A stretch of DNA of 64,000 nt from Paragordius varius (taxonomy: Eukaryota > Animalia > Nematomorpha), in assembly GCA_964247055.1 (NCBI GenBank), contig OZ176052.1:8246001-8310000 (forward strand), read 5' to 3'. Each line of letters opens with the position of its first letter. Within the stretch, counting starts at the first letter, position 1. Shown piece after piece: positions 3,301 through 51,420 of the stretch. Position numbers and translations under genes: made by a program. A model generated the notes under the pieces. It ran no database searches. It was not told the DNA's origin and worked only from the letters and a program-made list of their open reading frames with translations.

Positions 3301-6300
3301 CTGAAAATGCTGCATGCGAAGCCATTTGTGTTGGATACCCCTGGTGTAGATATAAAAAAGATGAGGCAAGTTACTTAAATTGAAATAACTTTTATATCAA
3401 TCTACATTGTTATGGCATTTGTATTTGCAATACTAATATTTGATATAAAATGTAATTTTCGCCATAATGCATATTACCATAAAACATTGTTTACAGATTA
3501 TTGTATTCTTTAAATAATTTATAGAAAAGTACTCTAAGTTTAATACACCAAGAAAGTTTTGCCGAACCTGTTGTTGATCGAAATTTTCAACTTAACACGA
3601 AGGATTATAACATTCTTAAGGGATATATAAATAAAACTATACCATCTCAAAACCTTGATCAAGTTTGCGGCAATGATTGGGAAAAAGCAATACTTATTCG
3701 CAGGCTTGCCATTGCTTATAATCAAAAATATGGAGCTGTCAGTTGCGATGAAAACAACTTAATAGGTTTTATATTTTATTTAAAGCTCTATTTATCAAAA
3801 ATGAATTTTTATCATTTCTTAGATTTAATTAATGAATTAAATGATGAATATGATGGATTTTCCGGGATACCATTCAATGGTTACAGAGATTATGGGTTGG
3901 TCAGTGGTGCATGTTGTGAAAATGTCATAGGCTTTATGCCTCTACCTTTGGGTAACATTTATTCTATTATTTAGCGATATTTTAATGAAATTTAAATACG
4001 TTTTCACCTATTGTTATTTAATTATTTTAAGTTCCGAAATATGTATACTATATTTTTAATCCAATTTACTCTCAAACCATTTATAAACTTTCATATTTAA
4101 TTAAAATACATATTATAATTATTATGATAGGCATTGTCGGACCACTCATTGTTAATGGTCGATTCTATTACGTCCCAATGGCGACCACAGAAGGATGTTT
4201 AGTGGCGAGTACTAATAGAGGATGCCGTGCTATTACAGTACACAATTATTATATATTTAATTCATGCGAATTTCAATTTGGTTATTTTTAAAATTAAAAA
4301 TTTCATATGTCTAAAACAAAACCTATAAAGATCTCGTCCTGTTCTATAAACTTGCAAATGAATTATTTAATAACATTGTTTCAATAATAACCGTTGATTT
4401 ATAAATAATTTTAATAGGATTTATATTTTCTCATGTTTAAAGAATTAATTTTAAAATCGACTCATCTAACCTTATTACAGTCGCTTTGATACTTATAATA
4501 CCATAAAATTAATGAAATCGATTTTAACATGTTTTATTACGTACAAAATTTCTGTATTTATACAATGCTGAAAAGAATATAAATAAAAATAATGTCCCAT
4601 TATAGGCAACTATAGATAAATCCATTGTTTAATATAAATTTTATGCGTAACATATTTTTTTGATAAGTTTGCCAAAAAATATCTAGCCTTAAAATTTTAG
4701 GAAAAAACGAAGTTAAAAAACCAAAGTTGGCATTAATGGGAAAATTTTTAGTTATACAAAACTTTCATATATAGGACAATATTTTTGCCATAAATTACAA
4801 ATTTACATACAGGAGAGTGTAAAACATTTTTCCCTAACGAAACAACCACAAAATCAGATGGAATCCTTTTCAACTCTATCAACCATTACATCGCTTGCTC
4901 AAACCGATTTTAACAATAACGATGTATGCAGCACAAATGAAATGCCTGTGCCTGGAGTCAGTGCCCATTTATTTGGTGATGGGATGAGTCGGGGACCAGT
5001 CATTAAATTTCCCACTGCGGCCAGAGCTGTGGCCGTTAAGGCTTGGTGCGAACAACCGCAAAATAGAGTCGAGATTAGTCGGATATTTGAGGCTACGAGT
5101 CGATTTTTGACGCTGACTCACCTTCAATTTGCAATCGCTGGTCGGCGCCTGTATATACGGTTCAAGGCACAGACTGGTGATGCCATGGGCATGAATATGA
5201 TGTCAAAAGGTTTTTAATTTTATTGTCATACACATATATTTGGGTGTTGAGTATATAACTTTGGTTTCATAAAGACTTGGTTTAACGAATCTTGAATATA
5301 GAGTTTACCGAATTTGAGTATTATATGTATAATTTTTTGTTACACTTAGGCTGTGATACAGTATTAAAATTCCTTGCATCTCATCATTCCGATATGGAAA
5401 TCGTTAGTGTTAGCGGTAATTTTTGTGTGGATAAAAAGGCATCAACGTTGAATTGGATAGAAGGACGCGGTAAATCTGTCGTGTGTGAAGCACTCATTTC
5501 CCAAGATGTTGTTTCAAAGGTACGTGATATTTATCGCATAAATTTTGAAACGCGAGACTTCTAAATTAAAATTTGTCAATATCAAACAAAGGATTCATCA
5601 GATTGATTATATATATATTACATCCATCTTTTTCAGCGGTAAAAGGATAAAAATCTATACCATTAAAATATTATTATTAAAAGTTTTATATCATATAATA
5701 AAAAAAATAAAAGCATTAGCATAAGGAAACAAGATAAGAAGAAGATAACATTATCCTCTTCCGCTCCATTAAAGTTATTTTCTATCAAAAATTTTAATTC
5801 GCATAAAGTTCAAACGAATTAGAGTTTATCCAATTTTTGAGAAGCGACCAAATTTTACTTCAATTTTTAAAAACACAATATACATTTGAACTGAGTTTTG
5901 AGTTAATAGCATTAACGACTATAGAAAGTGTTTTTATAGTAGTTTAAAATATAAAAAAAATTACAAAATACCTAATATGCTTTACATAGATTTGCTAATT
6001 AATTTTTAAAGCAAAAAGCTTGTAAAAAATTGATGTGATAAAGCATATATTCAAAAGAATATATCTCAATCCTAACTTTTTTGCCACTAGCTCGTCTCAA
6101 CTGGTCACGACAATGGGTAGTTATTGTCCGACAAAAATTTAACAAACATTGTTTAGTTTGTGAAATATAAATGATATATATATTAACAATATTTTTAAAG
6201 TGTCTAATAAAAAGCGATATTTTTAAAATTACTTGTTAGCTCCAAAAAATACTATGAGAATGCTGATATATTTATTTTTAGAACAGGGTGTCGAACACGC

Positions 6301-9420: not shown

Positions 9421-10682
9421 TAATTTATTTTTTAATTAGTGACCTAGATATGGATACTCATATTTTAAGTGTAAATTAATTTTTTTAAAAAACTCATGAC
9501 ATATAATACGGAAAAAACGTCAATTATTTTTCACAAAAACTATGGTTTTACCACCTTTTTTCCTATAAAAAATATCTAACAAAATATAATTGAGAGTATT
9601 GTCATTTTACAACTCTCTCCCTATGATAAAAGCTTCAAAAACAGTTTAAAAATTTGTCTAACTTTTTGTGTTTGTTCATATTTTACTCTAAGTTTTATTG
9701 CTATCTTTCATCTTTCAGTAATGGCATGGTTTTGTTAATATTATTTAATAAATGGGAAAGATGATAGGCATGCGTAAATAAAATATTTGTATAACATCAA
9801 GTTTAAAAAGCGAGTATCTATAATTTTTTATAAGATGTTGGTTATACGTCGTAGATCTAATTACAAATAAAGATTTGGTAGTAAATAGGTACACTTGTCG
9901 GATGATTTTTTAGTCAATAAAAAAATTAAACTATCTCTTTCTTTGTCTATAAAAGGCGAATTGGAATTTAACTGATTTTAGAGCTTTAACATTCCCACTT
10001 TAATAATGAGTACGGGAAATTTGGGCTGTTTCAGCGAAACTCTGACACATAAGTCAGATAATGTATATATATAAGAGAATGGTTACCTTTCAAATAAAAA
10101 CAATTAAAAAAATTTACATATAAATATATACTTTGACAGAAATTGTGCAAAAAATCCCGACTCAGAATTATGCTTAATTACAAAATAAATGACATCAATT
10201 GAACAGAAAAGATTATCTAAAATATATATATAAATTTACTTTTATCTTCCTTAGTTTGAATTTTGTGTGGATATACCAAAAGAATATTATCTTCTTTTAT
10301 TGGAAATAAGCTGGAAACATCTTTTCTATGCTTTAATTTATCTAAGATATTTCGACACTAAATTAAAACTAATATTACATCATGACTCGTTAAGTCAGCA
10401 ATCATTTTATTATTGTTATCAGTCAAATATTCGGAAACGGTAAGAAAAGCCTATTTATCATATATGATAAACTTGTTTAGCACCCAGAGTAAATGAGGCA
10501 ATATCGAATTCATTATCATAATTATTACGTATGTAGTTTTGTTTAATCCAATTGTTTAACTTTGTAATGGGATTCACCAAATATAAAATTTTAGCGTTAC
10601 TATTAAATCGTGCAAATTGAAAAGCTCTAAAAGGGATAAGGTGTAACATGTGTTACGGCATAACAACCATCGATCTGATTAA

Positions 10683-11257
10683 CACTTGAATACAACACAT
10701 TCAAGTCCTTCGATTCAAATTGGGGTAGTAAATACCCCAGGCCTGTTTAAAATTAAATTCTTTAAAAAATATAGAAGGAATCGAAACCATGGCAAAATTT
10801 TGCACTTATCTAACATTAATAAACCGAAATATATATAAAATTTTATTCAAAAATACTTGATAATACTTATTTTAAGCTAAAACCGAAAGATAAAAATTTC
10901 GTCATCGTGACATTCTCAAATTGTAAAATTAAAAAATTATGAAAACTAAACCGCTTTTTCTATTTCTATCAATGTTAGATGTAATTTATATAAAAAATTA
11001 TCTTTAGTTTTACCCTTAAAATTAAATAAAAACGATATTTTGCAAAAATTTTGTAAAATAAAAATGGCGTCGAAGTAGTTTGAGATGGAGCTTTTTTTTC
11101 ATAACAAAATTTTATCAAGATATTTTGGCATATTTATATAATATTTATCAGGATAGAAGCATAAATTTAAATTAGAACCGTTTTCTTTAGTAGTTTTTAA
11201 AAATATTAATTTAAATTTAGTCTGGGGTATTTAGATACCCCAATTTGAATCGAAGTG
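10683..11257. mobile_element. TTAA-flanked (piggyBac-like) MITE, about 575 bp
   Basis: TTAA at 10679-10682 and 11258-11261; CACT...AGTG termini with subterminal inverted GGGGTA/TACCCC motifs; a full-length inverted homologue lies at 49917-50486. Confidence 0.8.
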
Positions 11258-11284
11258 TTAAATAAAAAATTAGCTTTAATATTT

Positions 11285-11980
11285 AAGAAACCATGGCAAA
11301 ATTTTGCACTTATATATCATAATAAACCGAAATATGTAGAAAATTTTATTCAAAAATATTTGAGATTACTTATTTTAAGCTAAAACCGAAAGGTAAAAAT
11401 TTCGTCAACGTGACATGTGTGCAATGGTAAAATTAAAAAATGATAGAAAATAAACCGCTTTTTTATATCAATGTTAGATGTAAATAAAAAATTAGCCTAA
11501 ATTTTACCCTTAAAATTAAATGAAGACGATGTTTTGCAAAAATTTTGTAAAATAAAAATGGCGTTGAAGTAGTTTGATATTAAACTTTGGTTAAAACAAA
11601 ATTTTATTTAGATATTTTGGCATATATATATACTTTTTATTAGGATAGAAGTATAAATTTACATTGCGACCGTTTCATTCATAGTTTTTCAAAAATCCTA
11701 ACTCAAATTAAGTCTGGTGTATTTAAATACCCAATTTAAATTGTTAAATGAAAAATACATTTTAGCTACCAAATCAAATAAACACGATATTTTGCAAAAA
11801 TGCTGTAAAATAAAAATGGCGTTGAAGTAGTTTGATATTTGTCATCAAACTAAATTTTTTAAATATTTTGGCTCATACTAGCAGAAATTTAATTGGAACC
11901 ATTTTCGGTAGTTTTTTTAAAATATCCACTTAAATAGTGTCTCCGGTATTTCGATACCCCAATTTAAGTCGTAGTGTTTA
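11285..11980. repeat. Tandem, partly truncated copies of the preceding TTAA MITE
   Basis: Blocks such as AAACCATGGCAAAATTTTGCACTTAT, AAAATGGCGTTGAAGTAGTTTGA and ATACCCCAATTT recur about 500 bp downstream, plus a third partial unit. Confidence 0.75.
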
Positions 11981-14126
11981 AGAATTTAAAAATATCTTTT
12001 TGGGGTATTTTGTTCAAAGGCTTAAATTAATGAATGTTGAAGCTGAGTAGAGACGGTATAAAAACATTTTAGGGTAATACGAAAACGTTTCTATTAAAAT
12101 CAATGATTCTGAAAATTTTCCCAGAATTTTGAATGATACCTTTGTTCGTCTTCTTATGTGAAAAACACGATTTATATTAAACCAATATTTGGAGACTGAA
12201 TTTTTTAATCAATGATCTGAGTGGAAGGAAATGCTTTGCATCATCGATTTAAAAGAAATGGTTTTTTAATATCATTATACCGCTTTCACCAGAAAAATAC
12301 CATAAAATACCTACAATATTAACCTAATTTAATATTATATCATGAATTCTTAAAAAGATTTTGGTGTGGTAATTTAATATATATATTTTTCTCGCAATCT
12401 TAGCATGTTTGCGTTAACAGATGAAACTAGCCCATTTTGAGGGGCAAAAATAAAGACTTACGGCACCTTTAAAAAATAAAATTTGTAAAATTTGCTTTCT
12501 ATTATTTTATAAAATATTTTTGGGTTATGTATTTTTGGAATAAGGCATTTAGCTTTGACAAAAATATTTTATTTAGTACGATATGCTCTAATTTTGCGAT
12601 TTCTCGATGTGGAGCACTCGGCAGAAAAGTGTTATTTTATTCTTAAGTGACTCATAAAACCACCATGAAAATCCCTGAATAATTTCTATTAAGAGTCACT
12701 ATTTGGGTAGTTAAAAATAAATATAAGATATTTTTTTGACTTTTTATGAATTCAGGCCTTAAGCAAGTAGCCAAAGCCTTGGTATTTGAATCTATTTACC
12801 ATTAAATAGTAACTTCAACAATTTATTGGGATTTTTTATATTAAATTTTTATAGTTAATCACTTAAATATATAAATTCGTAGTAAAATAAATTAAAATTC
12901 ACAAAACCTCCAATAATTCACAATTTTTCAAAAATTAGTTTTCTTTATCACAGAGATTCCGTTAAAATTTATGTTTAAAACTTGGAAGTTTTTTTGGGTA
13001 AAGGCCATTTTTTCAATTAAGCATATATCAAAACTCGCCACAGATTTGGGCCAGATTGACTAAAATGGTTGAAATATCATTTAAAACTTTATGATGCATC
13101 ATGCTTTGACTAGGAGGTACGGTACACATATGAATTTACAAAATAAGCCACAAACTTTCTATTACACAATATTTGTCAAAGTCAATTTATATAAATTACC
13201 GAAGTCATTTTATTATACTAAACCTCTGTAAAAAAATTTAAATATAGATTACCAAGTGTTTTAACCTTTGTGCATCTAATATTTTGTGAATATATGATAA
13301 AAATTCCTTACTCTTTGTGATAACTAATAGATATGCTAACAAGCTGTTTGCATTTTCAATTTTAAGTTTTTGAGTGGCGTTGACCCCCAACATTTGCAGA
13401 TATTTGATAAATTTTAAAATGTAAAGATTATTAAAGCTTTTTAAATAATACCGTTTCATTTGCAAATTTGGCGATTTAATAAATAGGATATTTGGCAAAT
13501 AATTAAGGTGTAGATTTTATGCATAAATTTTTGACCAAAATATTTGAAACCCGTGTAATTCATATTTTTATGGTGGCAGTAATTATATATTTATCAATTT
13601 ATGTAAAATATACCCCAAAAAATACCAAAGTATTTGTTAATAAGTTTTAACAAATTAGATGGAAACTAACCTATATTTCACAATTATAAGATGAACCCAA
13701 TTAAAAATTATGTTAAAAAAATCATTTTATAAAATTGTTGGTTATCATTTCGGAAATAATAATTTAGTATGCCTCAACTTAACAATGTTAAACTCGGATG
13801 GCCTATTTATTTTTTGGCTAAAAAGTCTCCAGTAATGCAACCGGTATATGACAATACAATTATTTTATAATCATTACCCTTTGGTTAAAGAAAAAATTGG
13901 TTGTTTAATTAGTTTCATACCTGCTTAAATTACATTGAATATCTTAATTTATCGGTAGGATGCCAAAGATATGAGACTGGTGTTCTTAATTGTATGTCCG
14001 TTGATAATAATAATATTGGAAAAATATATTTTGCTTCAGTTTTATCTTTCATTATTAAAATTTAACATTCTAATAATTTAAATATGTTTTAAAAACATAT
14101 GTAAAATTATTAAGTTTTTTATTTGT

Positions 14127-17100
14127 TTAAATAAAAATTTCGCTTAAATTTGTTTTGATTTGATTTGTTATATATCCTGTATCTGGTTCATTTGGATTCA
14201 TCTCCTTCAAAAAATTGTATAACCATTCCAATCTATATTTAATTAAAATGAAAAACTTGCTGTATATATTTTGCATGACGATAGAACTTGATTTTGGAGT
14301 TAATACAAGATCATTTTCTTCATACTTTGAAATCTATTATAATATAACATTTAACACCTCAAATTCACCCTTGAACATTTCAAATTCATCCTAACATGAA
14401 TATTGTGTTTTTGATATCAAAACATATCAATGAGTAAAACCCAAAACTTATAACTTATTTTTATGATGAATTTGAAATGTTTATCTAAACACTATGTCAA
14501 ATTTAATGTATAAATTTTTTGCATGTTATATTTGGATAGGAGGGCTACCGGAACCCAAAAATGGGGGTCAAGTTGAATTTCAGGCAACTCCTTCAAAGTG
14601 TGATTTTAAACAGCAGCGATTTGATCATTAAAAAAATTATAAGTATAGCTAAATAGTTGCAATCATTTATATATTTTAAAAGTATTGGAATTATTATTAT
14701 ATGGATAAAGATTGGCTTTAATTTAAATATGTTAATATTTTTATCTGGCCATTTTGCAAAATACCTTTGTTGATAAAAAAATAAATTTTGGTTTAACCTG
14801 AGAGGCTCTTGATATTATATCAGGTGGAAAATTTAATGTTTGTGCTAAAATGGTTAAGTGATTATCATCGACAAATCCATCTTTAATTTTATATAAATAT
14901 ATCATGTCGGTTTGCTTGCTATCCACCAATACTTCCATGGTCTAATTATATGTATATAAATAAATAAATTAATTAATAATATTAATTATTAATTTAAGAG
15001 TTTCGAACGTATCAAACATAACTTCATTCGTTAAAATTTTAAACTAACTATTTTAATTCTGGAACAAAAGCTTCTTTTTGTATAATCATATCCTTTGGCC
15101 GCAGAAAATAGCTTTTAGCCTAATTCAAAAACCATCTATGATTTTTAAAAAAATTTATAAAAAGTTAATTGTTTACTGGATATACCCTGTCCTGTATTGC
15201 TGTGACTTAGTTAAAACGATATTTTAAGTCGGGTTGATAAAATATTTTTTTCTTAACTGTGGAAAATAAAACATGTGCAAACAAAACAATAATAGACATG
15301 ACATATTTCAGTAATCAAAACATCTTTAACCATCCCTCTACGTAGTGTTTGATCCGCCCAAAGCACGAATAATTGAATTAATTTACTATTAATTGATCAA
15401 AAGTTGGCATTAAATAGTCATTTACCACAAAATCCATGGTGTGTTTGTTAAAAATAATAAACTAAAAATTAAGCTTGACTGAAATTTGTGCATAGGATAA
15501 TACACGAATGCTTAAATAAACGTTTTTTTGGCACATTGCCCAGTTACAAACGCTTAATGCAGGGTTCTAAAGTTTTTGGAAAATGTTTTTGCTCTTATGG
15601 TCATCTTAAATGATAGTCACAGATAATTTTCAATTCAATGGAGTTTGAAAGAATTTCAGCGTTTTTAAACATAAACGTAACCTCCACGCCCTACCACCCC
15701 GGATTAACAGTTTAGAAGAGATATTATTATACCTTGAAAAATCATTATTTTATGACCAACTATTTTACAGCCGACCCGAAACGATAATTAAATCATTATC
15801 GTCCTGTTGCAAAACTAACACAATTTATCAATGGAGACTTTTTTTAAAACTAACTATCAAAGTTGATTGTTTGAATTGAATTTAATCCATTTTCTATTTC
15901 TAATGAGAACCAAACCCATTGAATTTATCGATACTCGCGACACTCCAAGGGAGTTTGAAAAGGGGCAAAAGATATATATCAATAATCAATTGTGTGCTGG
16001 TTGGAGGGGTGGTGGGATTTTCGACAGAATAGTGGTTATCGTAAACATCTACGGCGATGACAAAATAATTCGAAAACAAGATCATAGAGAAAACACCATT
16101 TAATTTATATCTTTCACAATAAACCAGCTATAACAAATTATAAGAATTGACAAATATTTTAAAATTATTTCAAATATATAATTTTTGTATTTTATGGTAA
16201 TTAATAACATCATATTTATGTTACTATTTATTATTTAGCTATTTTTCACATATTTTTAACAAATATTCAAAAAAACTGATATTTTTTAAAAAAATATCCT
16301 TCATTTTTTACCAAAATATCACCTAAATTTGACACTTATTTTGTATAATGAAATTAAAAAAATTTGAACCAGTAAATTAAAGCATTGTGTATACTTGAAA
16401 ATGAATCCAATCTTCCATTGGTGTTTTCAAATAGGCTTTAATATCAAGAAAATGAGTCACAATAAATAAAAATGGTTTTGAGCGCTCTTCACAATAAAAG
16501 TTTAGAAGGCCAGCTAAAAGACTCATGCCATCCTCCTAAATAAATATCGATATATTAGAATAATGTAATTTTTTATCATGCTAGAAATAATGTTAGCTAC
16601 ATAGTCTGGAGTATAGAGTTTAATACTTCATTAACTAAAGGCACATTAAAAATATTAATGATTTACACTGGTCTATATAGTGAAATTCCTATGATTAAAT
16701 AAAGTTGCATTTCTTCCTTACAAACATTTATTTACTTTAGAGCCATTATAAATCCAATTATATGAATTAATAATATATTGTTTTATAAAATATGCGGCAT
16801 ATTCGTTGAATAACTGTTTCTATGGTTGCATTTTTGACTTATAACCAATCAAATTGGTTTCTGCAACCATAAATAAACAATATTTCATTTTGTATTTTAT
16901 TTACCATTATTATTTTTTGCGGACACGTAATAAAAATAGTTTCAAAATGTTAAGCGATATAATTACGGTTAATACATTTTAAATCATGCAACTGAAATTC
17001 CCCTTTAGCCAATTAAATTGAATGGTCAATAATAGCTCTCACTACTGAATTCTGAATTATTTCTACTAATAAAAATTTCAAAATTTGTGGAATCCTACCG

Positions 17101-20100
17101 GTAGAGTTCCCTTCCCAATTTCATCCATTAAAACAAGAGATTTTGATGTAGCGAAGTTTAAAGCATGTACAATCTAATTATATATGTAACATCACATAAA
17201 ATGTCGTAGATAATAATTAAAAAAATAAACTTATAAAATAATGTATACTCTTGATATTTCAACCATAAATCGACTGTAATTGAGTGAAACTGAATCATAA
17301 GTGTATATTCGTGTGAAAAACTGATCCATTATACCGATTTCTGCAAATTTTGCTGGGATAAATGATCCAATGTGTGCCAAAAAAACTATAAGTCCAATCT
17401 AACAGTTTTGCGATTAATGTCATTATAATAAATAATTAATTAACAAGTGTAAGGAATGTAACTTGTTTTATGTATATGCTTTTTCCACTTCCGTGTGCGC
17501 CTGTAATCAATTTTATTTTATGATCCCTACTAACACAAATAGTTGTTGACTTTTCTTGTATTTCTAACGAATTGGATGAATTCGTGGAATTTAGCCCAAG
17601 GTTTTGTGGATCCCGGGCATAAGTGTCATTTGAAACGATTTGTTTGACACATAATTCTTGGAGAATGTGTCTATAATCAATTTTGAAACAAATTAAATTT
17701 TTTAACTTTTTATAATCAATAAATTACATTTCCCATAGTATAAAAATATCTAAACATTAATAATTTTGTTATTCAAATAGGACAGCGTCTGTTGAAAAAT
17801 TAAATAATTTTATTTATTTTATCTTTATATCATGATTATCTATAAATAATAAAATTTATTCTTCCAACGCTATCTCTTAATTCTAAAATTATTTAGGCTT
17901 GTTCTTTTTAGGTTTATCTTTCCAATCCAAATGTTTTTTTAATATTTTTTTATTTTCAATCATTTATGATAAAGATCATAAATTAATTATGCTCAATTTT
18001 TAAGGCTAATATTAAAAGTTAGTTAGATAAAAGTTAATAACCTTGGCTTTTTCTTTATTTGACATATTTACCATTTACACCTCTTATTCCTCTTTAAACA
18101 CTTCAAAATCACTCAACATTTAAATTCAACCTTGACCGTTTCAAATTCACCCTAAAAATAAATTATGTTTGTGGTAGTCAAAAAATAATATTTTTTATAT
18201 TTTTAAAAAACAAACTTGATTAAATTTAAAAGGTAAAGTTTGCATGACGAAATATTTCATATCAATAATGGGTTAGTAGCACAAAAACACATATATATTT
18301 TGATGTAGTCTTTTAGAGAATGTAAAAAAATAATTTTGTCCACCGGTGACCGAAATCGGATTTTTATGGGGTGATAAATTGTTCGGGGTATATTTGTTAC
18401 AAGAGTGATTTTGGTGTTCAAGGGTTAATTTAAGATGTAAAATGATATAAATATATATATAAATTGCTTAACCTATCAGAAATTTAAAAAACTAAAGATT
18501 AGATTATTTGGGAAGATGAATAAAGAAAAAGGATTGATTCAAAAAATAAACCGACTCATTGATTAAATTTCATATAAAAGGGTTGACGTATCGTTACCTT
18601 TATTACCCGAATCATTTATATAATATATTACAATATTATATGGATAAATGATGTAAATTTATAATTTTTAGCGATAACATTAAATTGTTTTATGCAAGGC
18701 CAAAAAATTAATCAGTAACGGATCAAATTTAATTAAAGTTCTTAAAATATCAAACATAAAAAATATACCGGCCTTCTTTGATATTTAAAACATTGTCCGT
18801 AGTCATTATAGGTTTCACCAAGTTGTATTCCATGGCACAAGCAGACAAAGTTACTAAGCTGTTTTGCCATATCAATTAAAAATTTAGTTAAATCAAGAGA
18901 ATTGGTTAAAAATAATAAAATATATTAAACACAGTTTAATTGATAAAAGGTAAAAACAAATTAAAAAAGGTTGAGGGACCAACTTAAAACGTTCAAGGAC
19001 CAACAGTCTTCAAGGACACTCCTGAAGTGCAAATGTTATATCAATAATGAGGGTTCTATTGCCGATATGTACTTTGAAACAGCGAAAAAACCAACCATAA
19101 ATTTATTAAATTTGGATAACTAATGCACTTTTCTAATTTCACTACACATTAGATTATGTTTCATTTTTTATAATTATGTGTAAAAAATAACTAAATATAA
19201 TCAATTTTTTTTATAAAAAAGGTATAAATTGTTGACAAGATGGAGGAAATCTGGTTCCAAATCAATATTTTGTCTCTGCCACCCGTTCCAATTATTTTTT
19301 TTAGAAAAAAACTGTTTTCAATCAAATGGTTCATATTCCATATGTTATTTTCCCAAGCTAATTCTGGCTCTGATTCCATTTTTTTTAATCAAATGGTTCT
19401 AATTTTGGTTCCATTTTAAATTTAGCTATACCCTAAATTTTTGCTACAATATGGATAAAATGTTATCAAAATAATATAAGTTAAAGAAAAATTGTTAAAT
19501 ACTTTTAAAAATAGAAAAATATAATTAATATTTCGTTTTATTAACTCTGGATTGTTTTTAGAATTTTATTCGGTTCCAAAACAATCAAAGAAAAGATAAA
19601 AACGAATATCAACCTTATAAATAGAAAGTCCTGAAACTAAATAATAGCACTTTTGGTCATAAAGAAGGGATTTCCTAATTATCCTTTCCACATTATATTG
19701 TTTGGTGCGCCAAAGTAAAAAAAATTACCAATCTATTTCGGCCACTGATATCTCTATATTACCAAGCAAATCCGATTTACTAAGAATATGGGATTCCAAT
19801 TTCTGTATAACCATTATTTCCAAATCTATCAAAAATTAATTAAATAAAAAACCATTTATATCACTATAAATATCCCCCATTTCGTTATCGAGCTCTAAAT
19901 ATTTAAATTTCTGAATATACGTGTCATTCTTGAATTTTTGTAATAGGCAACATCCTGATTGATAAACTACACATAATGGGAACATGATTGTAAAATAAAA
20001 TCAAAAATTATTTAAATAATATATAAAGTGATAATTTAGTCTTTTACGAAGAGGATGGGAATTTATATGTCATTCATTATTAAGGATATTATATATTTGT

Positions 20101-22004
20101 TTGTTAGAAATGATAATTATAACGGCTAGATAAAATATAATATGATATTTTTAAGAAGTGTATGAAATTTTTAAATTTCTTTACTAAAATTTATTGTAAG
20201 TACAGATTATTAATAATGAGCTTAGAATTCATTTAATCACAATATTTTTTTAAAATTCATAAAAAAGGGAAATATTTTATAAATTCAATCACCTTAAGCT
20301 CCCTAGATTCATCAGAACCCTCGCTTATAAAAGAGCTATAAGCAGTAGGAATAGTCAGCAAATATCCGAGCTTAATTTAATTAATAGAGAATAAACTGAA
20401 TTAATATATGTGACATTGCATTCCTTCACATTTTCTGACAATTTTTCAATTTCTTCCTCGGCAACTTTTGTCAGTAGGGTTGGTATTTTATCAATATCAA
20501 TGTATTCTGTTATTGTCAAACTAAAACAAACTTTGATCCAATTCATGACATATGCCAGAATTTATACACAATTTTTTGGTTTTTTTAGATTGGGTGAAAT
20601 TAATCTATTAGTAGTTACAATAATATATTTTATACGAATCCTTTTAACCAAGATTCAATTTCTTTTAACTCATCTATGTGAAATGCATTTCCGATTTGTG
20701 TAAAGAAATCAAAATCTTTGGAAAGACACAGTTCTCCTATCTGAATATAACATGTAATAGTCTATTGATGTAAACACCAAAAAACTTTATTTAATATGAC
20801 CCAATCGCTTAATGTAGATTTTGATATTTTCATCCGTCTAAGTATGTGCTTTATAGCATTATACCCAAATATACTTTCGTGATTTTTACTTCTTTCAAAA
20901 TGTTGGTAAGGTTTTGATACACATCAATATTTTTTATATCAGTTAAATATTCAATGACTAATAAACGATTATTAATGCATTCAATCTCGCCACTAGGTCG
21001 TAAAAACCATTCACTAAATTATACTATAATTAAATTACTTCAATAAATTTGATCCCATGTGTGTTTTACATTTATTAAATATATCTATTAGCTTAATAAT
21101 CTTTTTACTAAAAAGTGAGAGACCCTGTTTGTGATAATTGATTTTGTAAGAGCTTGGATGGCATTCTTCTGAAAATATTTGCAAATCTCTGAAAGTAATT
21201 AGTGATTGATTATACCTATAACTATTGTGATCCATGAAAAGTAATTTTTCACTAAAAAATAATTTTCAAATATTTATACATATGGAACATAACTAAATCA
21301 TCTACGCCATTCGACCCTTGGGTATTGCATGACAAGTAATTTTCTCTCTCAATAGTCATTAATAAAGCTCCTAAAGTGCTAACCTAATACTTAAATTTGA
21401 TATTAACCATAAGAGTATCGGACATGGGTATTTTAGTTCCAAGATAAATTTTCCATTCGTTTTCCGAAAGGTTGGGCATATTTGATAGCCATTTAAGTGT
21501 GGTAATCAATTTTAAATTTATATCATGAGCTTAATAATAATAACCTTAATTTTTACTAAAGTTAACGAAGGGCAAGAGTGTAAATGTAGAATCAATATTA
21601 TCGCAATCATTCATCCTAGACACTATTTTATTTTTTTAAATAACTTAGTTTTTTCAAAAAATCCAAAAAAGATTTGTTTTGCCTAGTTGTGGTAATTATC
21701 AAATTGGGTCTTATTTGATAGAGCACTCTATTAATAATAATATTTACGCATCATTGTTTTCTGAAATGTTTGACTTTCTTCTATATCTGACATAACTCCA
21801 ATTTTTTTATGAATCACGTTATAGTAACAAGCTCCAATTTTTCCTCTTTGATAAATAATGCATAAAATAATCTAATTATTAATTATTCCACTATACCTGT
21901 GTGGAATCATTAATCAAACTTTCCGAAGCTAGTTTGGTTTGTTTTGATTGCAAAATTTCATTAACCTCATTAACATCATTTTCATAACTATTAAAAGAAT
22001 CCAT
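14127..22004 (-). CDS. MSH5: MutS homolog 5 (meiotic MutS-gamma subunit), 26 exons, 2532 nt, 843 aa. Exons in transcript order: 21897-22004, 21748-21871, 21645-21725, 21557-21622, 21408-21529, 21280-21383, 21216-21251, 21109-21188, 21039-21084, 20875-21013, 20786-20848, 20636-20761, 20532-20604, 20397-20506, 20293-20370, 19921-19966, 19853-19894, 19729-19825, 18769-18858, 17463-17670, 17249-17398, 17099-17173, 16395-16535, 14798-14941, 14257-14333, 14127-14232
   Basis: All 25 joins are GT-AG, and the exon lengths sum to one uninterrupted ORF from ATG 22004 to TAA 14127. Collinear MSH5-like segments: IGACYY, DLQIFSEECHPSSYK..KQGLSLF, EWFLRP, RMKIS..SDW, IPTLLTKVAEEEIEKL..CNVTYI|LGYLL, GRHILQELC, ITGAHGSGKSIYIKQ, IGLIVFLAHIGSFIPA, FTRI, SLVLMDEIGKGT, IVTHF, IYLYKIKDG. 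Confidence 0.93.
15640..16103 (+). mobile_element. Decayed Gypsy-like integrase remnant inside MSH5 intron 23
   Basis: MEFERISAFLNINVTSTPYHP (integrase core-like) followed by PREFEKGQKIYINNQLCAGWRGGGI...DDKIIRKQ (integrase C-terminal-like); frameshifted. Confidence 0.55.
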
Positions 22005-23509
22005 TAATTTTTAAATCGTCTGCTCTGGTCACCTTTTAATAATATCGAAATATATTTTTTAAACTGATAATATTTTTATATAATAATCATATATCATTGT
22101 AAATTTTAAATTACTTTTTATTTTATCATTTTTTTCAATAAAAATATTAAAAAAGTTAACATTTATCTGAAGTTGCAATATAAAATTGACCGCATGATAA
22201 TTTAATAGATCGAAACCAAAATCAGTTAAAAAACCAAATTTGTAAATATATTGTCATGTTGGTGGGTTTTTAATAAACTTAAATAATTATTGAAATAAAT
22301 TGTTAGAATAGGCTAGAAACGCATTTGGACAAAATTTTTGATCATATATATCAAAAATTTGATCGATAGGGCTAATTGCGTAAGCAATAAACAAATTTTA
22401 ACGCTTGAAAACAAAAATGCAAGCATTTTGTTGTGTTTGTAAGAGTCGTGTTCAACATTCGTTTCGATTAATATGTAACATTGTTTGCACATAAATAAAA
22501 AATGCTATTCTAAAAATATATATAGATAATTAAATTTAGTTTTTTTGTTCTTCTTTGATTATGTTATTATTATACTACTAAAAGCGGTTCGTTAGATTGA
22601 ATTTCATTTTTATTTGGTTACAACATATATTAAAAATTGTGGTATTAATTGAATGGTGGGACCATGAATGCATTTTTAAGCAGTCAACGTTTAATTTTTG
22701 ACAAGTCCAAACACAAAACCCATCCTATGTAAATTAATAAAAAAATCTGTATTAAAAATTTTATTAGCTCATAAATAAAAGTTTCGTAATATACGGTTTG
22801 TTTAAAAATGTTTTCAACACATCTTTAATCCAACAGAAAACTTTGATACATATTAAGGTGCTTCTAGATATTTTTTTATATTATTTAACCAGGAAATCCT
22901 AAAAAAATTGATATTGACGTTTCGGAATTATCTTTCAAACTTTCAATTCGATATCATAGGCATTTTTGGTTGGTTCAAAACTAACACTAGAATTTAAAAA
23001 ATAGCATAACAGCTGCATCTAAAGTACGCCTAATTAACTTCATTTAAATCATAAACATTTAATGCCAAATTAGCATGTAATCAATTATGGTTTATAAAGG
23101 CCGGAAACTAGCCCATTTTATATCAAAAGCAGCAGGTGCACACATTTATACATTAATGAAAATATTGAATTTAAGACAATTGCCCAGAAAATGTATAGCT
23201 CATTCAAACTAAGTGGAAGATTTTTATTTATTTTTAATGCACGATAATCGAATCGCTTTAAAAATCTCTCATTAAGCCCCCATGGTAATGGGCCATAAAT
23301 CGCGTCTATAATATTGTTAGAAAACTTGAAGCCCGATATAAATTCAATAATATAGATATTTCAATTATTTTGAAGGAGCCAAACATAGTCGACCCACTTT
23401 AGCTGCTCCTTCCCATCCCTCTAAAAATAAAATTTTTGCATGATCCATGCCAAAAATAATTTGAGGCAAGTGTTCGCCCAAGTTTCGAGACTACAATAAA
23501 TCGATATTT

Positions 23510-24035
23510 ATTTTTATTATTACATTACATGTTTTCACTCGTGAGAGCGGTCATGTTATACAACCTGTCTCGCCATAGAACTCTATCTATGGCGTCTTCT
23601 GCATTAAGCTCGTATTCTGCTAGCTCTCGTTTGAATGTGTCTATCCATTTCGTTTTAGGCCGCCTACATTTTTGTTTCCCTTCAACTATATGACTCTCTA
23701 TTATTTTTGCAATATAATTAGAATCTCTCCTTTCAATGTGCCCAAACCAACGTAGCCTATTTTTTGACATTCTTTCCACTATTGGTTTAACATCTGTGAT
23801 CCCATGAATAAATATATTCTTTACATTGTCTTTTCTTGTTACCACACACATATAAACATTTTCATTTCCGTCACGTTGAAATGTCTTTCTTCGGATTTTT
23901 TGGCACCCCACGTCTGTGAATTATACATCATTGTGTGTTGAACAACTGTACTGTATATCTTACCTTTCACTCTAACGTCAACATTTCGATCACATAACAC
24001 GCTTGAAATTTTCTTATTTATAAACCCATGTTTTA
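23510..24035 (-). mobile_element. 5'-truncated RTE-clade LINE (3' end of ORF2)
   Basis: KISSVLCDR..VKGKIYSTVV..MMYNSQTW, then KNRLRWFGHIERRD...GKQKCRRPKTKW..EDAIDRVLWR (ORF 23525-23911); short TAA/TTA-rich tail. Confidence 0.85.
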
Positions 24036-25380
24036 TAAATTAATGAATAAGGCTTAACCCTCTGTAAATGCCCATAAAAACAACATGACTTTTAAGCTAA
24101 CTTTAGTCCATATGAAAACCTTGTTTACATAAAGGATTTAGCCATTAGATAAAATCAAAAATTTATTCCAGTGATTTTTTAATTGGCTGCTGGGTAGTCA
24201 TCCTCCTATGTTAAATAGCCCATGATATAATAACAATGCGGTTTTGAAGCAGCTTTTTGGATAGGCTTTAGGACCATGTAATATCATGTTTTAGGTATAT
24301 TTAAATAAAAGCAATAATTTTAGTTACGCCCGGGAATAGTCATCACTTTGTAAATAGGGCCGTATATAAATTAGACATGAAGCTTTTCGGCATAACATAG
24401 GTGACCATATGGGATCAATCGTTTTTGATATTTCCCGAATAAAGGCAAAAAAATTTTGTCCCGTAGCCGCACCTGATGTATAACGCGCACTCATACAAAA
24501 AAATCGACTATTGAGCAATTTTTCGGGAAACGTTCTGAGCGCCTCTATATTTTATCAAAATTTTATGATATAACGCTAATTTTACGACTTCTCAATATGG
24601 ATTACCACAAAGCTATAAATAATTTTATAAAATGAAGGAAGATAAAATATATTTCAGTAATAACAATACGCGTTAAAAAACAATCAATAACGGTTTATTT
24701 TACATATAATTTTGGTGGTAACAACAGTAAAGCAGATTTTTAAAAATAAATTTTAAAAAGGGCGATTAGATACGACACGCGCGCAATAAAGCCAAATTAT
24801 ATATTCTATCTGACTATTTGAGATTTGGTCAAGATCGTCTGCTTTTAAATATAAGAAAAACACATCAAAGTCATCAAACATTTTTTTATACTTTTGGAAT
24901 ATATATGAATCTCCATTTGTAAAGCGTGCAATCTAAAGAGGCTTATTACGCTGATAAAGTTCGGTAACTTAGAAATGAATCTTTTTATAATTATTGAGTG
25001 TCCCGCAAAACCAGTTGTTTGGAGGAAATGTACCTATGCCACAAAAAAACCAAAGATATGCCCCTTTTTACACTAAATTTATTTTATTTAATAATCTTTT
25101 AACCATATATTTACGATGTATTTAACTATAATGGAATTAATATTATTTGGGTTATCGTCTGTTCATTATTATAATTGTTTTTTGTCGTTAACGTTTTATG
25201 TGATTACAACTAATTCTTAGCAACACCTCAATAACAAACCTCAGATCATGTAATAATCAAACAATAAAAAGTCTTCTAAAGCGCAGATTATGTTCGGTAT
25301 TTTTTCGCGATTTTTATCTACACGATTAATAACAATAATATACGTTAAAAAACTAATAACATGGTCATATCATATATATA

Positions 25381-25900
25381 CCATTTGCACTTCAAGAGTG
25401 TCCTTGAACATGTTGTTGAACATTTCAAATTGTTGATTTAACCATAATTTTGTATTTATTTTTTTATTTTATTATTTATAAACCTAATATTATATATTTA
25501 TCCATTTAAAAATAAAAAATTTTCTTCAAATACCACTTTTTTGTTTTAAACTAATTTTTTTCCAATATAAATAATTATAAACTTTTAAATGTTTTTGTGA
25601 ATAATAACCCAAAAATCATATATATTTTAAATAACTGTTAATATTAATAAAGATAACGGTTTCTCAATGATTAAAGGTTGATATTGATTAGAAATTTATG
25701 TTAAATAATAGAAAATAGGTTAAAAACGATAAATAAGATAATAGATATAAGATTTGATTGATAAAAGTTAAAAACAAAACAAAAAGACAAAGGACGAACT
25801 TCAAATGTTCAGAGACCAACTAAGTGTTCAAGCACCGACCAACTTGAAGTGTTCAGGGACCAACTGGAAGTGTTCAAGAACACTCTTGAAGTGCAAATGG
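25381..25900. mobile_element. TA-flanked MITE, 520 bp (Tc1/mariner-like target site)
   Basis: About 29-bp terminal inverted repeats (TIRs) CCATTTGCACTTCAAGAGTGT(C/T)CTTGAAC, embedded in (TA)n on both sides; a partial copy lies near 18965-19040. Confidence 0.8.
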
Positions 25901-26125
25901 TAATATATATATAATATATATATATATACTCACGGTGCTCTAACAATTGGACCAATTGTACGAAGGAGTATACCCCGTGGTATTGTCATATTCTTATATA
26001 CAATATTATGTTTTTCTGTATGTAGGGGATTTTAAAATAAATTTTAGAACCTTTTACTTTATCTATTATAACGTAACATAAAGCATATTTATTTGAAAAA
26101 ATTAAAACATTCATAAAACCAGACT

Positions 26126-26465
26126 TTATTTTAAATGATGAAATAATTTTTCAGCAACCTAAAATATATATAAAAAATTACATGATGGTCTCTATAGTGA
26201 ATAAAATCAAAAAGTTCTTCTTCACAAGTTTCATCCGTACCGGGAGTATTGTTAACACGTTCGGTGCAAACTTCCAACCGTTTCTTCAATATCCTCGCTT
26301 TTTTAGTTAATACAGCTTTTTCACGAAGTTCAGTCATGGGATCCTTAAAATATTATAATAAAAACTTTTAATTCCTAATATAAACATAAAAAATACTTCT
26401 TCATCGGCTGCATTAACAATAAAAAAATTAGTAAGGCGATTAAAAAACCCAAAAAAATTTATCAT
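26126..26465 (-). CDS. UQCRH: Cytochrome b-c1 complex subunit 6 (hinge protein), 87 aa. Exons: 26397-26465, 26182-26343, 26126-26158
   Basis: MINFFGFFNRLTNFFIVNAADEE|DPMTELREKAVLTKKARILKKRLEVCTERVNNTPGTDETCEEELFDFIHYRDHH|VAEKLFHHLK*. Introns of 53 nt and 23 nt. The C-terminus matches the hinge-protein end (DHCVAHKLFNNLK) only after the 23-nt intron is removed. Confidence 0.93.
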
Positions 26466-26829
26466 AGTAACCACACGAAGACAGAGAAAAAAGAGTTTGT
26501 GAGCTGACCTAAACAACCAAAAACACTGATAAAATATCAAGCAAGTATTGTACAAATATAAATAAGGTGCTCAAGACTTAGTTATAAATTTTTTTAAAAA
26601 TGCATCGTGAAAAAATAATCAATTTTAAAAGGAAACCTGAAAATAACATATCTCTTATTAAAATTTATAAGAAAAATTTGGACTCAAATCATGTGCACAT
26701 TTTCGATATAAAATAGTGTCATTGATTATGCCAGATAAATTGAAATAGTACTTTTAGGATACAACTTTAACTAAATGATTTAGAGTTAAAATAAAAATAT
26801 ATTACATTCCTGTATTTTTCATAGTGTCC

Positions 26830-26837
<8 letters not shown>

Positions 26838-26866
<29 letters not shown>

Positions 26867-27862
26867 TGATAGGAAAATGTCGCATGATTATCATAATGGT
26901 TTTGGCCCTTACGATCATATAAAAAAGTTATTTAATCTTTTATGGCAAGTGCCGCATATCAGAAAATGACAAATTTTTGTCCATTTTTTCAAATAAAATT
27001 TTTTAGGTGAAGACTAAAGGCTTCATTCCATAAGATATCACTAAAATCATATACTACATAAGTGTCCACAAATATTATCTGTTTAAATATTATGTTCTGA
27101 TATGAAAATGTTTCATGATTATCTAGAGGCTTTTGATTTTGGCCCTTGCTAGTGATTTAAGAAAATTATTTGCATTATTGTGGGTAAGTGGTCCGTGTCA
27201 GAAAATGACAAAATTGCTCATATTTTAAATAATATTTATGATCAAAGAGGCTTCATCCTAAAAATTATCACAAAAATATACCATAAACTACATAACGAAA
27301 GCAAAAAATATTTTAAAATAATTATAATTAATCTCATTTTTTGCTTTACTAAAATGTGCAAGTTCTATTAAAATAAACGCAAAAAGGTCATAGCGCGCAA
27401 AAATTTAAATGTAATATCAACTAAATATTTTTTTTAAAAATGCATATTTTTTAAATTTAACTTATAGTAAGATTTTTTAGAAGCGTACTTCATATATTTA
27501 TGTTTTGAGGGAAACGGTTAAAACGCTTTAAGATATTATAAAAACACTTTCTCGATATAATACGATATTGCTGAACATCGCTTCATAATTTTAATTTAAA
27601 AGTTAGTATGCTTAATTTTTTTGTAAATTTTTGTAAAAAATCACCATATTTATTTAACATATATTTATTTGATATAAGTAAAAATCTGAGGCAATGGAAA
27701 TCATCATCATCGAATTATCGAGAAAGTGATTTTGTAATATTTTAAAGCGTTTTAACCCTTTTTCTCAAAACATAAATATATGAACTACGCTTCAAAAAAT
27801 TAATAATTAGATTTTTGGAAAAACTATGCATTTTAACATATAGTCTTTGATATCAAAATTTA

Positions 27863-50700: not shown

Positions 50701-51420
50701 TTCCGATTTTTTTAAAAAAGGTGTTTATTATAGATAAATCACTATTTTGTAAAAAGTCGATCAAACGTGATCCATTGTCATTTATATCGTCAGTTCCATA
50801 ACCTCCGTGAATATCTGCAATGTATTGCTTCCCAAAATGGCCATTAAGGTCACCCATTAAAATTAAAATTACATTATCAGGGATTAAAAGGAGATTTTCA
50901 TACAAAATATCGTAAAAGCCGGTTTTATGTTGGTTAGATAATCCATTTTGTGGAGCATAAATGGAGAAAAGATTAAATATTTTATCATGAAGTAAAATTT
51001 TAATGTGGAGAATTCGGTCATTTATATAGTTTATAGAAGTAATACTATCATTGTAATCATTATGTATAAGGAATCCAACTCCAGATGTCTTATTAATATT
51101 GTTGCCGGACCAATAGAGATAATAATTGAGAATCGATGTAGACCCGTTGTTTTTCCAGTGGCATTCCTGAAGAGCGCATATTGGTATATTGCGCTTTTGC
51201 AAAGCTAAAATGATTTCATAGGTTTTTCCATTTAAAGAATTAATAAAGCTCCCGAATTTTAGTTTGGTTGCGTTGAATTTGTCATAATTAGTGTTAGATG
51301 TTGTGATATTTGCTCCTTTACATTCCAGAATGTCCTTTCTTGCGAAATAACCCTTCTGATTGAGGGAAAGAGGCTTAGAATGGGATATTTAAGATAAATT
51401 ACAAATAAAAGAAAATTGAG
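47711..51420 (-). mobile_element. Near full-length, inactivated RTE-clade LINE (APE endonuclease + reverse transcriptase)
   Basis: Endonuclease: ICALQECHW, GVGFLI, IYAPQ, ILMGDLNG, SMIDLFL. RT: IPIYKKGD..SYRPIKLL, QCGFRP, AFD, GLHQGSILSPTLFN, LYADD, YLG, LTYGSESW, LQWAGHVERR. Frameshifts and stops are present. Short ATGA-type 3' tail; 5' end abuts (TA)n at 51425. Confidence 0.92.
49917..50486. mobile_element. TTAA-flanked piggyBac-like MITE inserted into the LINE
   Basis: TTAA at 49913-49916 and 50487-50490; inverted homologue of 10683-11257. Removing it restores the LINE frame RIIKKSDIRCL-NYKKLTDD. Confidence 0.85.

What the first reader, a model, noticed from the sequence alone, without database searches (positions are those of the whole stretch)
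19729..22004. MSH5 is built on ultra-short (22-31 nt) GT-AG introns: 17 of 25, including the first 14 in a row
Seen: restoring one 843-aa MSH5 ORF requires removing GT-AG segments at 21872-21896 (25 nt), 21726-21747 (22), 21623-21644 (22), 21530-21556 (27), 21384-21407 (24), 21252-21279 (28), 21189-21215 (27), 21085-21108 (24), 21014-21038 (25), 20849-20874 (26), 20762-20785 (24), 20605-20635 (31), 20507-20531 (25), 20371-20396 (26), 19895-19920 (26), 19826-19852 (27) and 14233-14256 (24). Retaining any of 14 of them frameshifts or stops the protein. Established: introns of this size are known from ciliates, chlorarachniophyte nucleomorphs, microsporidia and dicyemids, and lie well below the usual minimum for most animals. 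Inference: this animal-like, TE-rich genome runs a spliceosome that can excise about 25-nt introns as well as kb-sized ones. How novel that is depends on the organism's identity.
Basis: partly seen in the sequence, partly recalled or inferred. Interest (0 to 1): 0.93.

Follow-up and report, generated by a model that had tools for sequence, protein, structure and literature searches.

The report
MSH5 gene with 22-31 nt introns
An intact meiotic MSH5 gene, in what looks like a horsehair-worm genome, has 17 introns of only 22-31 bases, and each sits exactly where fish, sponge or placozoan MSH5 has a normal intron; they are therefore very probably real introns shrunk to near the physical minimum, though no RNA data were available to show the cutting.

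Summary
On the minus strand, ATG 22004 to stop 14127-14129, removing 25 GT-AG segments gives one 843-aa open frame. Seventeen of them are 22-31 nt, including the first 14 in a row. Retaining any of 14 shifts the frame or gives a stop.

- **Chance control:** none of 300 shuffles and none of 74 other window tiles can be rescued this way.
- **Intron positions:** all 25, including all 17 micro-introns, fall at the same alignment column and phase as introns in MSH5 of pufferfish (23/25), a sponge (24/25), Trichoplax or a damselfly. Many exon lengths are identical.
- **Assembly:** DNA contigs from three runs cross the micro-introns colinearly. The one 1-nt indel in the 5' region lies inside a micro-intron.
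- **Organism:** the closest protein is Gordionus (Nematomorpha) MSH5-like, sister in a tree at 100/100, with UQCRH as neighbour in both genomes.
- **RNA:** none was found.
- **Literature:** a 2026 paper lists only Myxobolidae and Dicyema as animals with introns under 30 bp. The nematomorph genome papers I could read never mention introns.

This scan had already flagged the same intron class in other windows of this genome. I read it as a new lineage for a known kind of intron.

The parts
14127..22004 (-). MSH5 coding region: 26 exons, 25 GT-AG introns, 843 aa; ATG at 22004, TAA at 14127-14129
   Evidence: MutS_V and MutS_III on exon pieces; colinear with MSH5 orthologues
21872..21896 (-). micro-intron 1, 25 nt, phase 0
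   Evidence: retention shifts the frame and gives a stop; same position and phase as Takifugu 83-nt and Dysidea 173-nt introns
21726..21747 (-). micro-intron 2, 22 nt, phase 1
   Evidence: Takifugu 132, Dysidea 2786, Trichoplax 212
21623..21644 (-). micro-intron 3, 22 nt, phase 1; 23 nt in other individuals (1-nt insertion at 21625)
   Evidence: indel in runs X1 and X5
21530..21556 (-). micro-intron 4, 27 nt, phase 1
   Evidence: in-frame stop if retained; matches introns in all five orthologues
21384..21407 (-). micro-intron 5, 24 nt, phase 0
21252..21279 (-). micro-intron 6, 28 nt, phase 2
   Evidence: precedes the 36-nt exon that has the same length in fish, sponge and Trichoplax
21189..21215 (-). 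micro-intron 7, 27 nt, phase 2; in frame and stop-free if retained
   Evidence: position matches Takifugu 271, Dysidea 1647, Trichoplax H2 79
21085..21108 (-). micro-intron 8, 24 nt, phase 1; in frame and stop-free if retained
   Evidence: matches Takifugu 88 and Dysidea 712; two SNPs inside it in run X6
21014..21038 (-). micro-intron 9, 25 nt, phase 2
20849..20874 (-). micro-intron 10, 26 nt, phase 0
   Evidence: Takifugu 81, Dysidea 1035
20762..20785 (-). micro-intron 11, 24 nt, phase 0
   Evidence: two SNPs inside it in run X1
20605..20635 (-). micro-intron 12, 31 nt, phase 0
20507..20531 (-). micro-intron 13, 25 nt, phase 1
   Evidence: about 400 nt at the same place in Gordionus
20371..20396 (-). 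micro-intron 14, 26 nt, phase 0
   Evidence: about 220 nt in Gordionus
19967..20292 (-). intron 15, 326 nt, phase 0
19895..19920 (-). micro-intron 16, 26 nt, phase 1
   Evidence: about 47 nt in Gordionus
19826..19852 (-). micro-intron 17, 27 nt, phase 1
   Evidence: about 70 nt in Gordionus
18859..19728 (-). intron 18, 870 nt, holds a dispersed repeat
   Evidence: raised read depth
17671..18768 (-). intron 19, 1098 nt, holds a very high-copy repeat near 17973-18366
17399..17462 (-). intron 20, 64 nt
17174..17248 (-). intron 21, 75 nt
16536..17098 (-). intron 22, 563 nt
14942..16394 (-). intron 23, 1453 nt
14334..14797 (-). intron 24, 464 nt (donor 14797 preferred over 14764)
   Evidence: orthologue introns at offset 0; shares a repeat with intron 19
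14233..14256 (-). micro-intron 25, 24 nt, phase 2; in frame and stop-free if retained
   Evidence: matches Takifugu 67, Dysidea 47, T. adhaerens 272; Gordionus reads through with no extra residues and no intron there

Best explanation
The 17 segments are genuine GT-AG spliceosomal introns inherited from the ancestral animal MSH5 gene. In this lineage, a relative of the horsehair worm Gordionus, they have shrunk to a discrete near-minimal class of 22-31 nt (median 25). Shown: their ends, the frame they restore, their one-to-one match to orthologous introns, and their presence in independent DNA reads. Inferred: they are removed from the pre-mRNA by the major spliceosome working across the intron (intron definition). 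The recognisable signals are very reduced: GT followed by A/T at +3 to +6 (one G at +5 among the 17), usually TAG at the 3' end, and an interior that is 89% A+T with A residues close to the 3' end as possible branch points. Also inferred: the long introns of the same gene are members of the same set that were inflated, at least partly, by inserted repeats. The product is an apparently functional MSH5, the MutS-gamma subunit that stabilises meiotic crossover intermediates.
For: - **Ends and frame:** GT-AG ends and frame restoration.
- **Chance control:** 0 of 300 shuffles and 0 of 74 other tiles can be rescued the same way.
- **Intron positions:** all 25 introns share column and phase with introns of orthologues, 23/25 in Takifugu and 24/25 in the sponge Dysidea.
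- **Exon lengths:** 124, 81, 36, 63, 73, 110, 150 and 75 nt recur in both fish and sponge. 122, 46 and 139 recur in the fish. 46, 42, 97 and 90 recur in the sponge and Trichoplax.
- **Trichoplax:** four exons missing from its gene model were found inside its annotated introns, with exactly our lengths (80, 46, 63, 110).
- **DNA contigs:** runs X1, X5 and X6 span the micro-introns without length change, apart from a 1-nt insertion inside micro-intron 3. The only exonic indel is 3 nt.
- **Intact gene:** the ATPase motifs are intact (GAHGSGKS, DEIGKGT). The best database matches are named MSH5.
- **Neighbouring gene:** UQCRH has a 23-nt intron where Gordionus has a 45-nt one.
- **Long introns:** repeats lie in introns 18, 19 and 24.
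Against: - No RNA evidence: five RNA-labelled runs were listed under the same species label. I laid four, and they hold neither MSH5 nor UQCRH.
- No spliced or annotated protein of this species is in the protein collection.
- Three micro-introns (7, 8, 25) would not break the frame if retained.
- Branch-point-like motifs are absent from several micro-introns.
- At the five micro-intron positions compared (13, 14, 16, 17, 25), Gordionus has introns of 47 to about 400 nt or, at 25, none. The extreme shrinkage is therefore not shared across the phylum at these sites.
Confidence: 0.9

Rival explanations
1. The gene is a decaying pseudogene and the short segments are small insertions that happen to have GT and AG ends.
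For: No transcript evidence. MSH5 is dispensable in some lineages (general knowledge).
Against: All 17 segments sit at the exact position and phase of orthologous introns. The exons hold no stop or frameshift over 843 codons. Frame-breaking indels among individuals are confined to introns. Shuffles never give such a rescue.
Confidence: 0.02
2. Assembly artefact: the introns are longer in reality and were collapsed.
For: The sequence is A+T-rich and of low complexity, which can be misassembled. Run X1 may be the sample the assembly came from.
Against: Contigs from runs filed under two other organism labels (X5, X6), carrying their own SNPs, cross micro-introns 1, 3, 4, 6-10, 12, 13, 16 and 17 with no gaps except a single T (tables 4 and 8).
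Confidence: 0.01
3. The segments are real introns, but a subset is spliced inefficiently or conditionally (intron retention as regulation of a meiosis-specific gene). The three stop-free in-frame ones (7, 8, 25) are sometimes translated.
For: Three of 17 are multiples of 3 without stops. A 2026 paper notes that extremely short microsporidian introns are spliced inefficiently (PMC13644364).
Against: Orthologues have no residues at these three places (alignment offset 0). Gordionus reads straight through the site of intron 25 without the 8 extra residues.
Confidence: 0.12
4. The segments are removed at the DNA level (programmed elimination, as for ciliate internal eliminated sequences) or bypassed by the ribosome, not by splicing.
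For: The size class resembles that of ciliate eliminated sequences (general knowledge).
Against: The ends are GT-AG, not TA-TA. No DNA contig shows a joined form in the listed joints (table 5). The positions are ancestral intron positions.
Confidence: 0.01

Closest known systems
Ultra-short introns of Dicyema japonicum and myxobolid myxozoans (median 22-27 bp; PMC13644364)
   Same: [quoted passage not shown]
   Different: In those genomes the short class is the bulk of all introns. Here, within one gene, it coexists with introns of 64-75 nt and of 0.3-1.5 kb that carry repeats, in a relative of a 288-Mb, 64%-repeat genome. The lineage (Ecdysozoa: Nematomorpha) is named nowhere in that paper's main text. 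Its 51-genome species list, in the supplement, was not seen.
Flatworm microintrons (Opisthorchis, Schistosoma, tapeworms; PMC6530080)
   Same: A separate short peak beside a long-intron peak. The short introns cluster together and towards the 5' end of genes. They are missed by default annotation settings.
   Different: The flatworm peak is at about 37 bp (class defined as under 75 bp). Here it is 22-31 nt, and the phylum is different.
Ciliate tiny introns (Paramecium about 25 nt; PMC5014332)
   Same: The same size class and very A+T-rich interiors.
   Different: Ciliates have only short introns. No depletion of stop-free multiples of 3 is visible here (3 of 17, a small sample).
MSH5 of other animals (Takifugu XP isoform X1 P0232, Dysidea P0192, Trichoplax H2 P0255)
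   Same: The same domain order, about the same length, and the same 24-26-exon structure with many identical exon lengths.
   Different: Their introns at these positions are 47-2786 nt. Walker A reads GAHGSGKS here and in Gordionus, against GPNxSGKS in Trichoplax and Hetaerina.

Membership tests
U2-type GT-AG spliceosomal intron | GT at the 5' end and AG at the 3' end | tested here: met
   17 of 17 micro-introns and 8 of 8 longer introns
U2-type GT-AG spliceosomal intron | Removal restores a continuous conserved reading frame | tested here: met
   843-aa frame, colinear with MSH5, controls negative
U2-type GT-AG spliceosomal intron | Position and phase shared with introns of orthologues | tested here: met
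   25 of 25 at offset 0 to 2 columns with the same phase
U2-type GT-AG spliceosomal intron | Absent from mature mRNA | not testable with these tools
   No RNA run holds the locus; no spliced protein on record
U2-type GT-AG spliceosomal intron | Branch point and polypyrimidine tract | tested here: inconclusive
   YTRAY-like motifs in 11 of 17; the interior is 47% T and 42% A, with no distinct tract
MSH5 (MutS homologue 5) | MutS domains III and V with Walker A and B motifs | tested here: met
   Pfam MutS_V and MutS_III on exon pieces; motifs read
MSH5 (MutS homologue 5) | Closest to proteins named MSH5 rather than to other MutS paralogues | tested here: met
   Top full-length matches are named MSH5 or MSH5-like (bits 250-430). 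The lower matches that carry a family name are bacterial MutS (bits up to 180). Sister to Gordionus MSH5-like at 100/100
MSH5 (MutS homologue 5) | MutS5_N domain (PF27035), and no mismatch-binding domain I | tested here: inconclusive
   The short N-terminal exon pieces gave no Pfam hit. The spliced protein could not be handed to the Pfam tool. The aligned orthologues carry PF27035
Animal lineages with introns under 30 bp (Dicyemida, Myxobolidae) | Genome-wide median intron length under 30 bp | not tested
   Only two genes were examined here: 17 of 25 introns in MSH5 and at least 1 in UQCRH. Other windows were flagged by the scan but not checked by me
Flatworm-type 5'-clustered microintrons | A separate short class, clustered and 5'-biased, beside long introns | tested here: met
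   Introns 1-14 are all micro; the lengths fall into 22-31, 64-75 and 326-1453 nt
Flatworm-type 5'-clustered microintrons | Platyhelminth host, with the peak near 37 bp | tested here: not met
   The nearest relative is a nematomorph; the median here is 25 nt
Ciliate-type eliminated DNA segments | TA-bounded, and missing from somatic DNA | tested here: not met
   GT-AG ends; present in all DNA contigs laid

The most novel reading that the evidence does not exclude
Horsehair worms, or one branch of them, are a third independent animal lineage with a discrete class of introns under 30 nt. Unlike dicyemids, they keep this class side by side with kb-sized, repeat-laden introns in a large genome. 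Gene finders and BUSCO runs that do not allow such introns would then truncate or miss many genes. Part of the reported loss of universal animal genes in nematomorphs could be an annotation effect. As an example, the Gordionus MSH5 models cover only about half the protein.
Probability: 0.65. Interest if true: 0.75.

Novelty: new member of a known kind. Interest (0 to 1): 0.62.

Why it matters
Introns under 30 nt test the physical limits of the spliceosome. In animals they are on record only for dicyemids and myxobolid myxozoans (PMC13644364, September 2026). Here one gene shows 17 of them, each tied to a normal-sized intron in fish and sponge. The shrinkage can therefore be read intron by intron.

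A lineage that splices 22-nt and 1.4-kb introns in the same transcript would be a natural system for asking how splice sites are paired. It would also warn that standard annotation of these genomes is systematically broken. The nematomorph genome papers I could read do not mention introns at all.

Tried and rejected
- **RNA evidence:** The runs holding the locus (X1, X5, X6) are DNA. I laid four (X10-X13) of the five listed RNA-labelled runs of the same species label. They hold nothing from 16200-26900, not even UQCRH.
- **Protein collection:** a search with the main UQCRH exon, hoping for a spliced transcript-derived product, found no candidate.
- **Gordionus 5' half:** neither exon-by-exon Smith-Waterman nor a profile HMM of the N-terminal 400 residues found exons 1-12 in the 10 kb upstream of the Gordionus gene. 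Whether Gordionus shares micro-introns 1-12 therefore stays open.
- **Gordionus exon mapping:** exact mapping of the annotated Gordionus protein to its locus failed. I used alignments of our exon peptides instead.
- **First homologue search:** the mite MSH5 as query returned only mites.
- **Other libraries:** PDB has no MSH5 among the sequence matches to the ATPase exon. Rfam found nothing in the window.
- **Pfam limit:** the whole spliced protein could not be given to Pfam, because it has no reference and I did not type long sequences.
- **Alternative donor:** the 854-aa variant (donor at 14764) was rejected because orthologue introns match the 14797 donor at offset 0.
Full report
**What is there.**

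Removing the first 14 turns three stop-filled frames into one open frame starting at ATG 22004. I then traced the rest of the gene by reading the frames around MutS-like open stretches. This added eight further GT-AG introns:
- 19967-20292 (326 nt)
- 18859-19728 (870 nt)
- 17671-18768 (1098 nt)
- 17399-17462 (64 nt)
- 17174-17248 (75 nt)
- 16536-17098 (563 nt)
- 14942-16394 (1453 nt)
- 14334-14797 (464 nt)

If retained, 14 of the 17 micro-introns shift the frame or bring a stop. Numbers 7, 8 and 25 are stop-free multiples of three.

**More than chance.** GT and AG are common in A+T-rich DNA, so I asked whether any path of 22-31 nt GT-AG deletions could cross 1712 nt without a stop. The real sequence can, with 12 deletions at the minimum. 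None of 300 Markov shuffles could, and none of 74 other tiles of the window on either strand.

**Not an assembly artefact.** The runs that hold the locus are DNA. Their contigs lie colinearly over the micro-introns. Two of these runs (X5, X6) are filed under other organism labels and carry their own SNPs.

I classified the differences against the gene model:
- Every 1-nt indel lies in an intron. One is inside micro-intron 3, which is thus 22 or 23 nt in different individuals.
- The only exonic indel removes 3 nt.
- Four SNPs fall in micro-introns 8 and 11.

**It is MSH5, and colinear.** Exon pieces match Pfam MutS_V and MutS_III. One exon served as query against 1.84 billion representatives, which brought in full-length relatives.

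Against these, the spliced model aligns in single colinear stretches, for example residues 13-800 to 3-766 of P0100. The named matches are:
- 'mutS protein homolog 5-like' (Gordionus, Hetaerina)
- 'MutS protein msh5' (Blomia, Lobulomyces)
- 'MutS protein 5' (Balamuthia)
- 'DNA mismatch repair protein MSH5' (a JGI record)

Among the lower-scoring matches, those that carry a family name are bacterial MutS. Identity to fish, frog, ape, cnidarian and sponge MSH5 is 30-34% over about 785 aligned residues.

**The decisive test: intron positions.** I fetched the genomic loci of MSH5 from five species and mapped each annotated protein exactly onto its DNA:
- Trichoplax adhaerens
- Trichoplax sp. H2
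- the damselfly Hetaerina
- the pufferfish Takifugu
- the sponge Dysidea

In a joint alignment, all 25 introns of the window gene lie at the same column (offset 0, rarely 1-2) and the same phase as an intron in at least one orthologue. That is 23 of 25 in Takifugu and 24 of 25 in Dysidea, and it includes all 17 micro-introns.

The exon lengths tell the same story:
- Window: 108, 124, 81, 66, 122, 104, 36, 80, 46, 139, 63, 126, 73, 110 ...
- Takifugu: 90, 124, 81, 54, 122, 110, 36, 83, 46, 139, 63, 129, 73, 110 ...

Four exons absent from the T. adhaerens model lie inside its annotated introns. With splice sites included, their lengths are exactly 80, 46, 63 and 110 nt, as here. The orthologous introns are 47-2786 nt; here they are 22-31 nt. 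These are therefore ancient introns that have shrunk, not insertions.

**Which organism.**
- The best match by far is Gordionus sp. m RMFG-2023, phylum Nematomorpha (76% identity over the query exon, 51% over residues 379-781).
- In a maximum-likelihood tree, the window protein and the Gordionus protein are sisters with 100/100 support on a long shared stem.
- The Gordionus locus (L001) has UQCRH next to MSH5, as the window does, though in a different orientation.
- Its genome has 26.9% G+C and 64% repeats.

The divergence is deep, so the window comes from another nematomorph lineage or a close relative. I could not name the species.

**Comparison with Gordionus.** At homologous positions, Gordionus introns are about 400, 220, 47 and 70 nt where the window has 25, 26, 26 and 27 nt. 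Intron 25 is absent there, and the Gordionus sequence reads through without extra residues.

In UQCRH, the window's 23-nt intron (26159-26181) corresponds to a 45-nt Gordionus intron. The under-30 class is thus more extreme here than in Gordionus. Exons 1-12 could not be found in the 10 kb upstream of the Gordionus model.

**Anatomy of the micro-introns.**
- Lengths are 22-31 nt, with a median of 25.
- After GT come A or T at +3 to +6, apart from one G at +5 among the 17.
- The 3' end is mostly TAG.
- The interior is 42% A, 47% T and 12% G+C.
- Branch-like YTRAY motifs occur in 11 of 17, with the A often 3-10 nt from the 3' end.

The long introns differ in content. Introns 18, 19 and 24 share repeats with other parts of the window. 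Read depth in intron 19 rises to about 279,000 against about 500 nearby. Insertion of repeats therefore probably explains at least part of the long class.

**How it most likely works.** Shown: the structure, the conservation and the DNA support. Inferred: removal by the major spliceosome with pairing of splice sites across the intron, tolerant of very short spacing between the 5' site and the branch point, as in ciliates, dicyemids and myxobolids. No RNA was available. I laid four (X10-X13) of the five listed RNA-labelled runs under the same species label, and they hold neither gene. The protein collection has no product of this species.

**Known or new.**
- A September 2026 paper states that introns under 30 bp in animals are found only in Myxobolidae and Dicyema japonicum among 51 genomes, and it predicts more cases (PMC13644364). 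Its main text does not mention nematomorphs. The species list, in the supplement, was not seen.
- The Gordionus genome preprint and a comparative preprint on four nematomorph genomes contain the word 'intron' zero times.
- Flatworm microintrons share the 5' clustering and the two-peaked length distribution, but they peak at 37 bp (PMC6530080).
- Earlier notes of this scan flagged the same class in other windows of this genome and reached the same taxon. I treat those as leads, not as support.

**Verdict.** This is a new lineage for a known kind of intron, shown here with unusually complete comparative evidence for one gene and still lacking RNA proof.

Noticed in passing
window 26130-26400, minus strand: UQCRH (cytochrome bc1 hinge protein). 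The 23-nt GT-AG intron at 26159-26181 lies at the same codon as a 45-nt intron in Gordionus. Upstream, 26344-26396 is either one 53-nt intron or two 22-nt introns (26375-26396, 26344-26365) around a 9-nt micro-exon (26366-26374). Gordionus has a 12-nt micro-exone-like piece there, between introns of 49 and 53 nt.
   Followed up: partly
window 26182-26343, minus strand: The window's UQCRH keeps only two of the cysteines that Gordionus has. The outer pair (REKC ... DQC in Gordionus) reads REKA ... DHH here, which suggests loss of one of the two disulfides of the hinge protein.
   Followed up: no
L001 (Gordionus OX940786.2) 10001-20910 and 23678-23848: The public Gordionus MSH5 models (426-467 aa) cover only the C-terminal half. 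The last two coding pieces lie about 2.8 kb beyond the annotated end, right next to UQCRH. The N-terminal half is not within 10 kb upstream.
   Followed up: partly
L002 (Trichoplax adhaerens DS985247.1) about 3504-3583, 3771-3816, 4181-4243, 5027-5136: The 706-aa T. adhaerens MSH5 model skips four exons (80, 46, 63, 110 nt) that sit inside its annotated introns with good splice sites.
   Followed up: yes
window 17973-18366 (in MSH5 intron 19); also 57789-58146 and 14341-14426: A very high-copy dispersed repeat. Contig word depth is about 279,000 against about 500 for the flanks in run X1, and related copies lie elsewhere in the window.
   Followed up: partly
window 47721-51202, minus strand: Broken non-LTR retrotransposon: open stretches with endonuclease and reverse-transcriptase domains, split over several frames.
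   Followed up: no
window 17463-17500 and L001 about 16520-16551: The Walker A motif reads GAHGSGKS in both the window and Gordionus MSH5, against GPNxSGKS in the Trichoplax and Hetaerina sequences read here. It is a shared derived change that also ties the two organisms together.
   Followed up: no
runs X10-X13: Four (X10-X13) of the five listed runs filed as RNA under the window organism's species label hold nothing from 16200-26900, not even the respiratory gene UQCRH at 90% likeness. They may come from a different cryptic species or be mislabelled.
   Followed up: no
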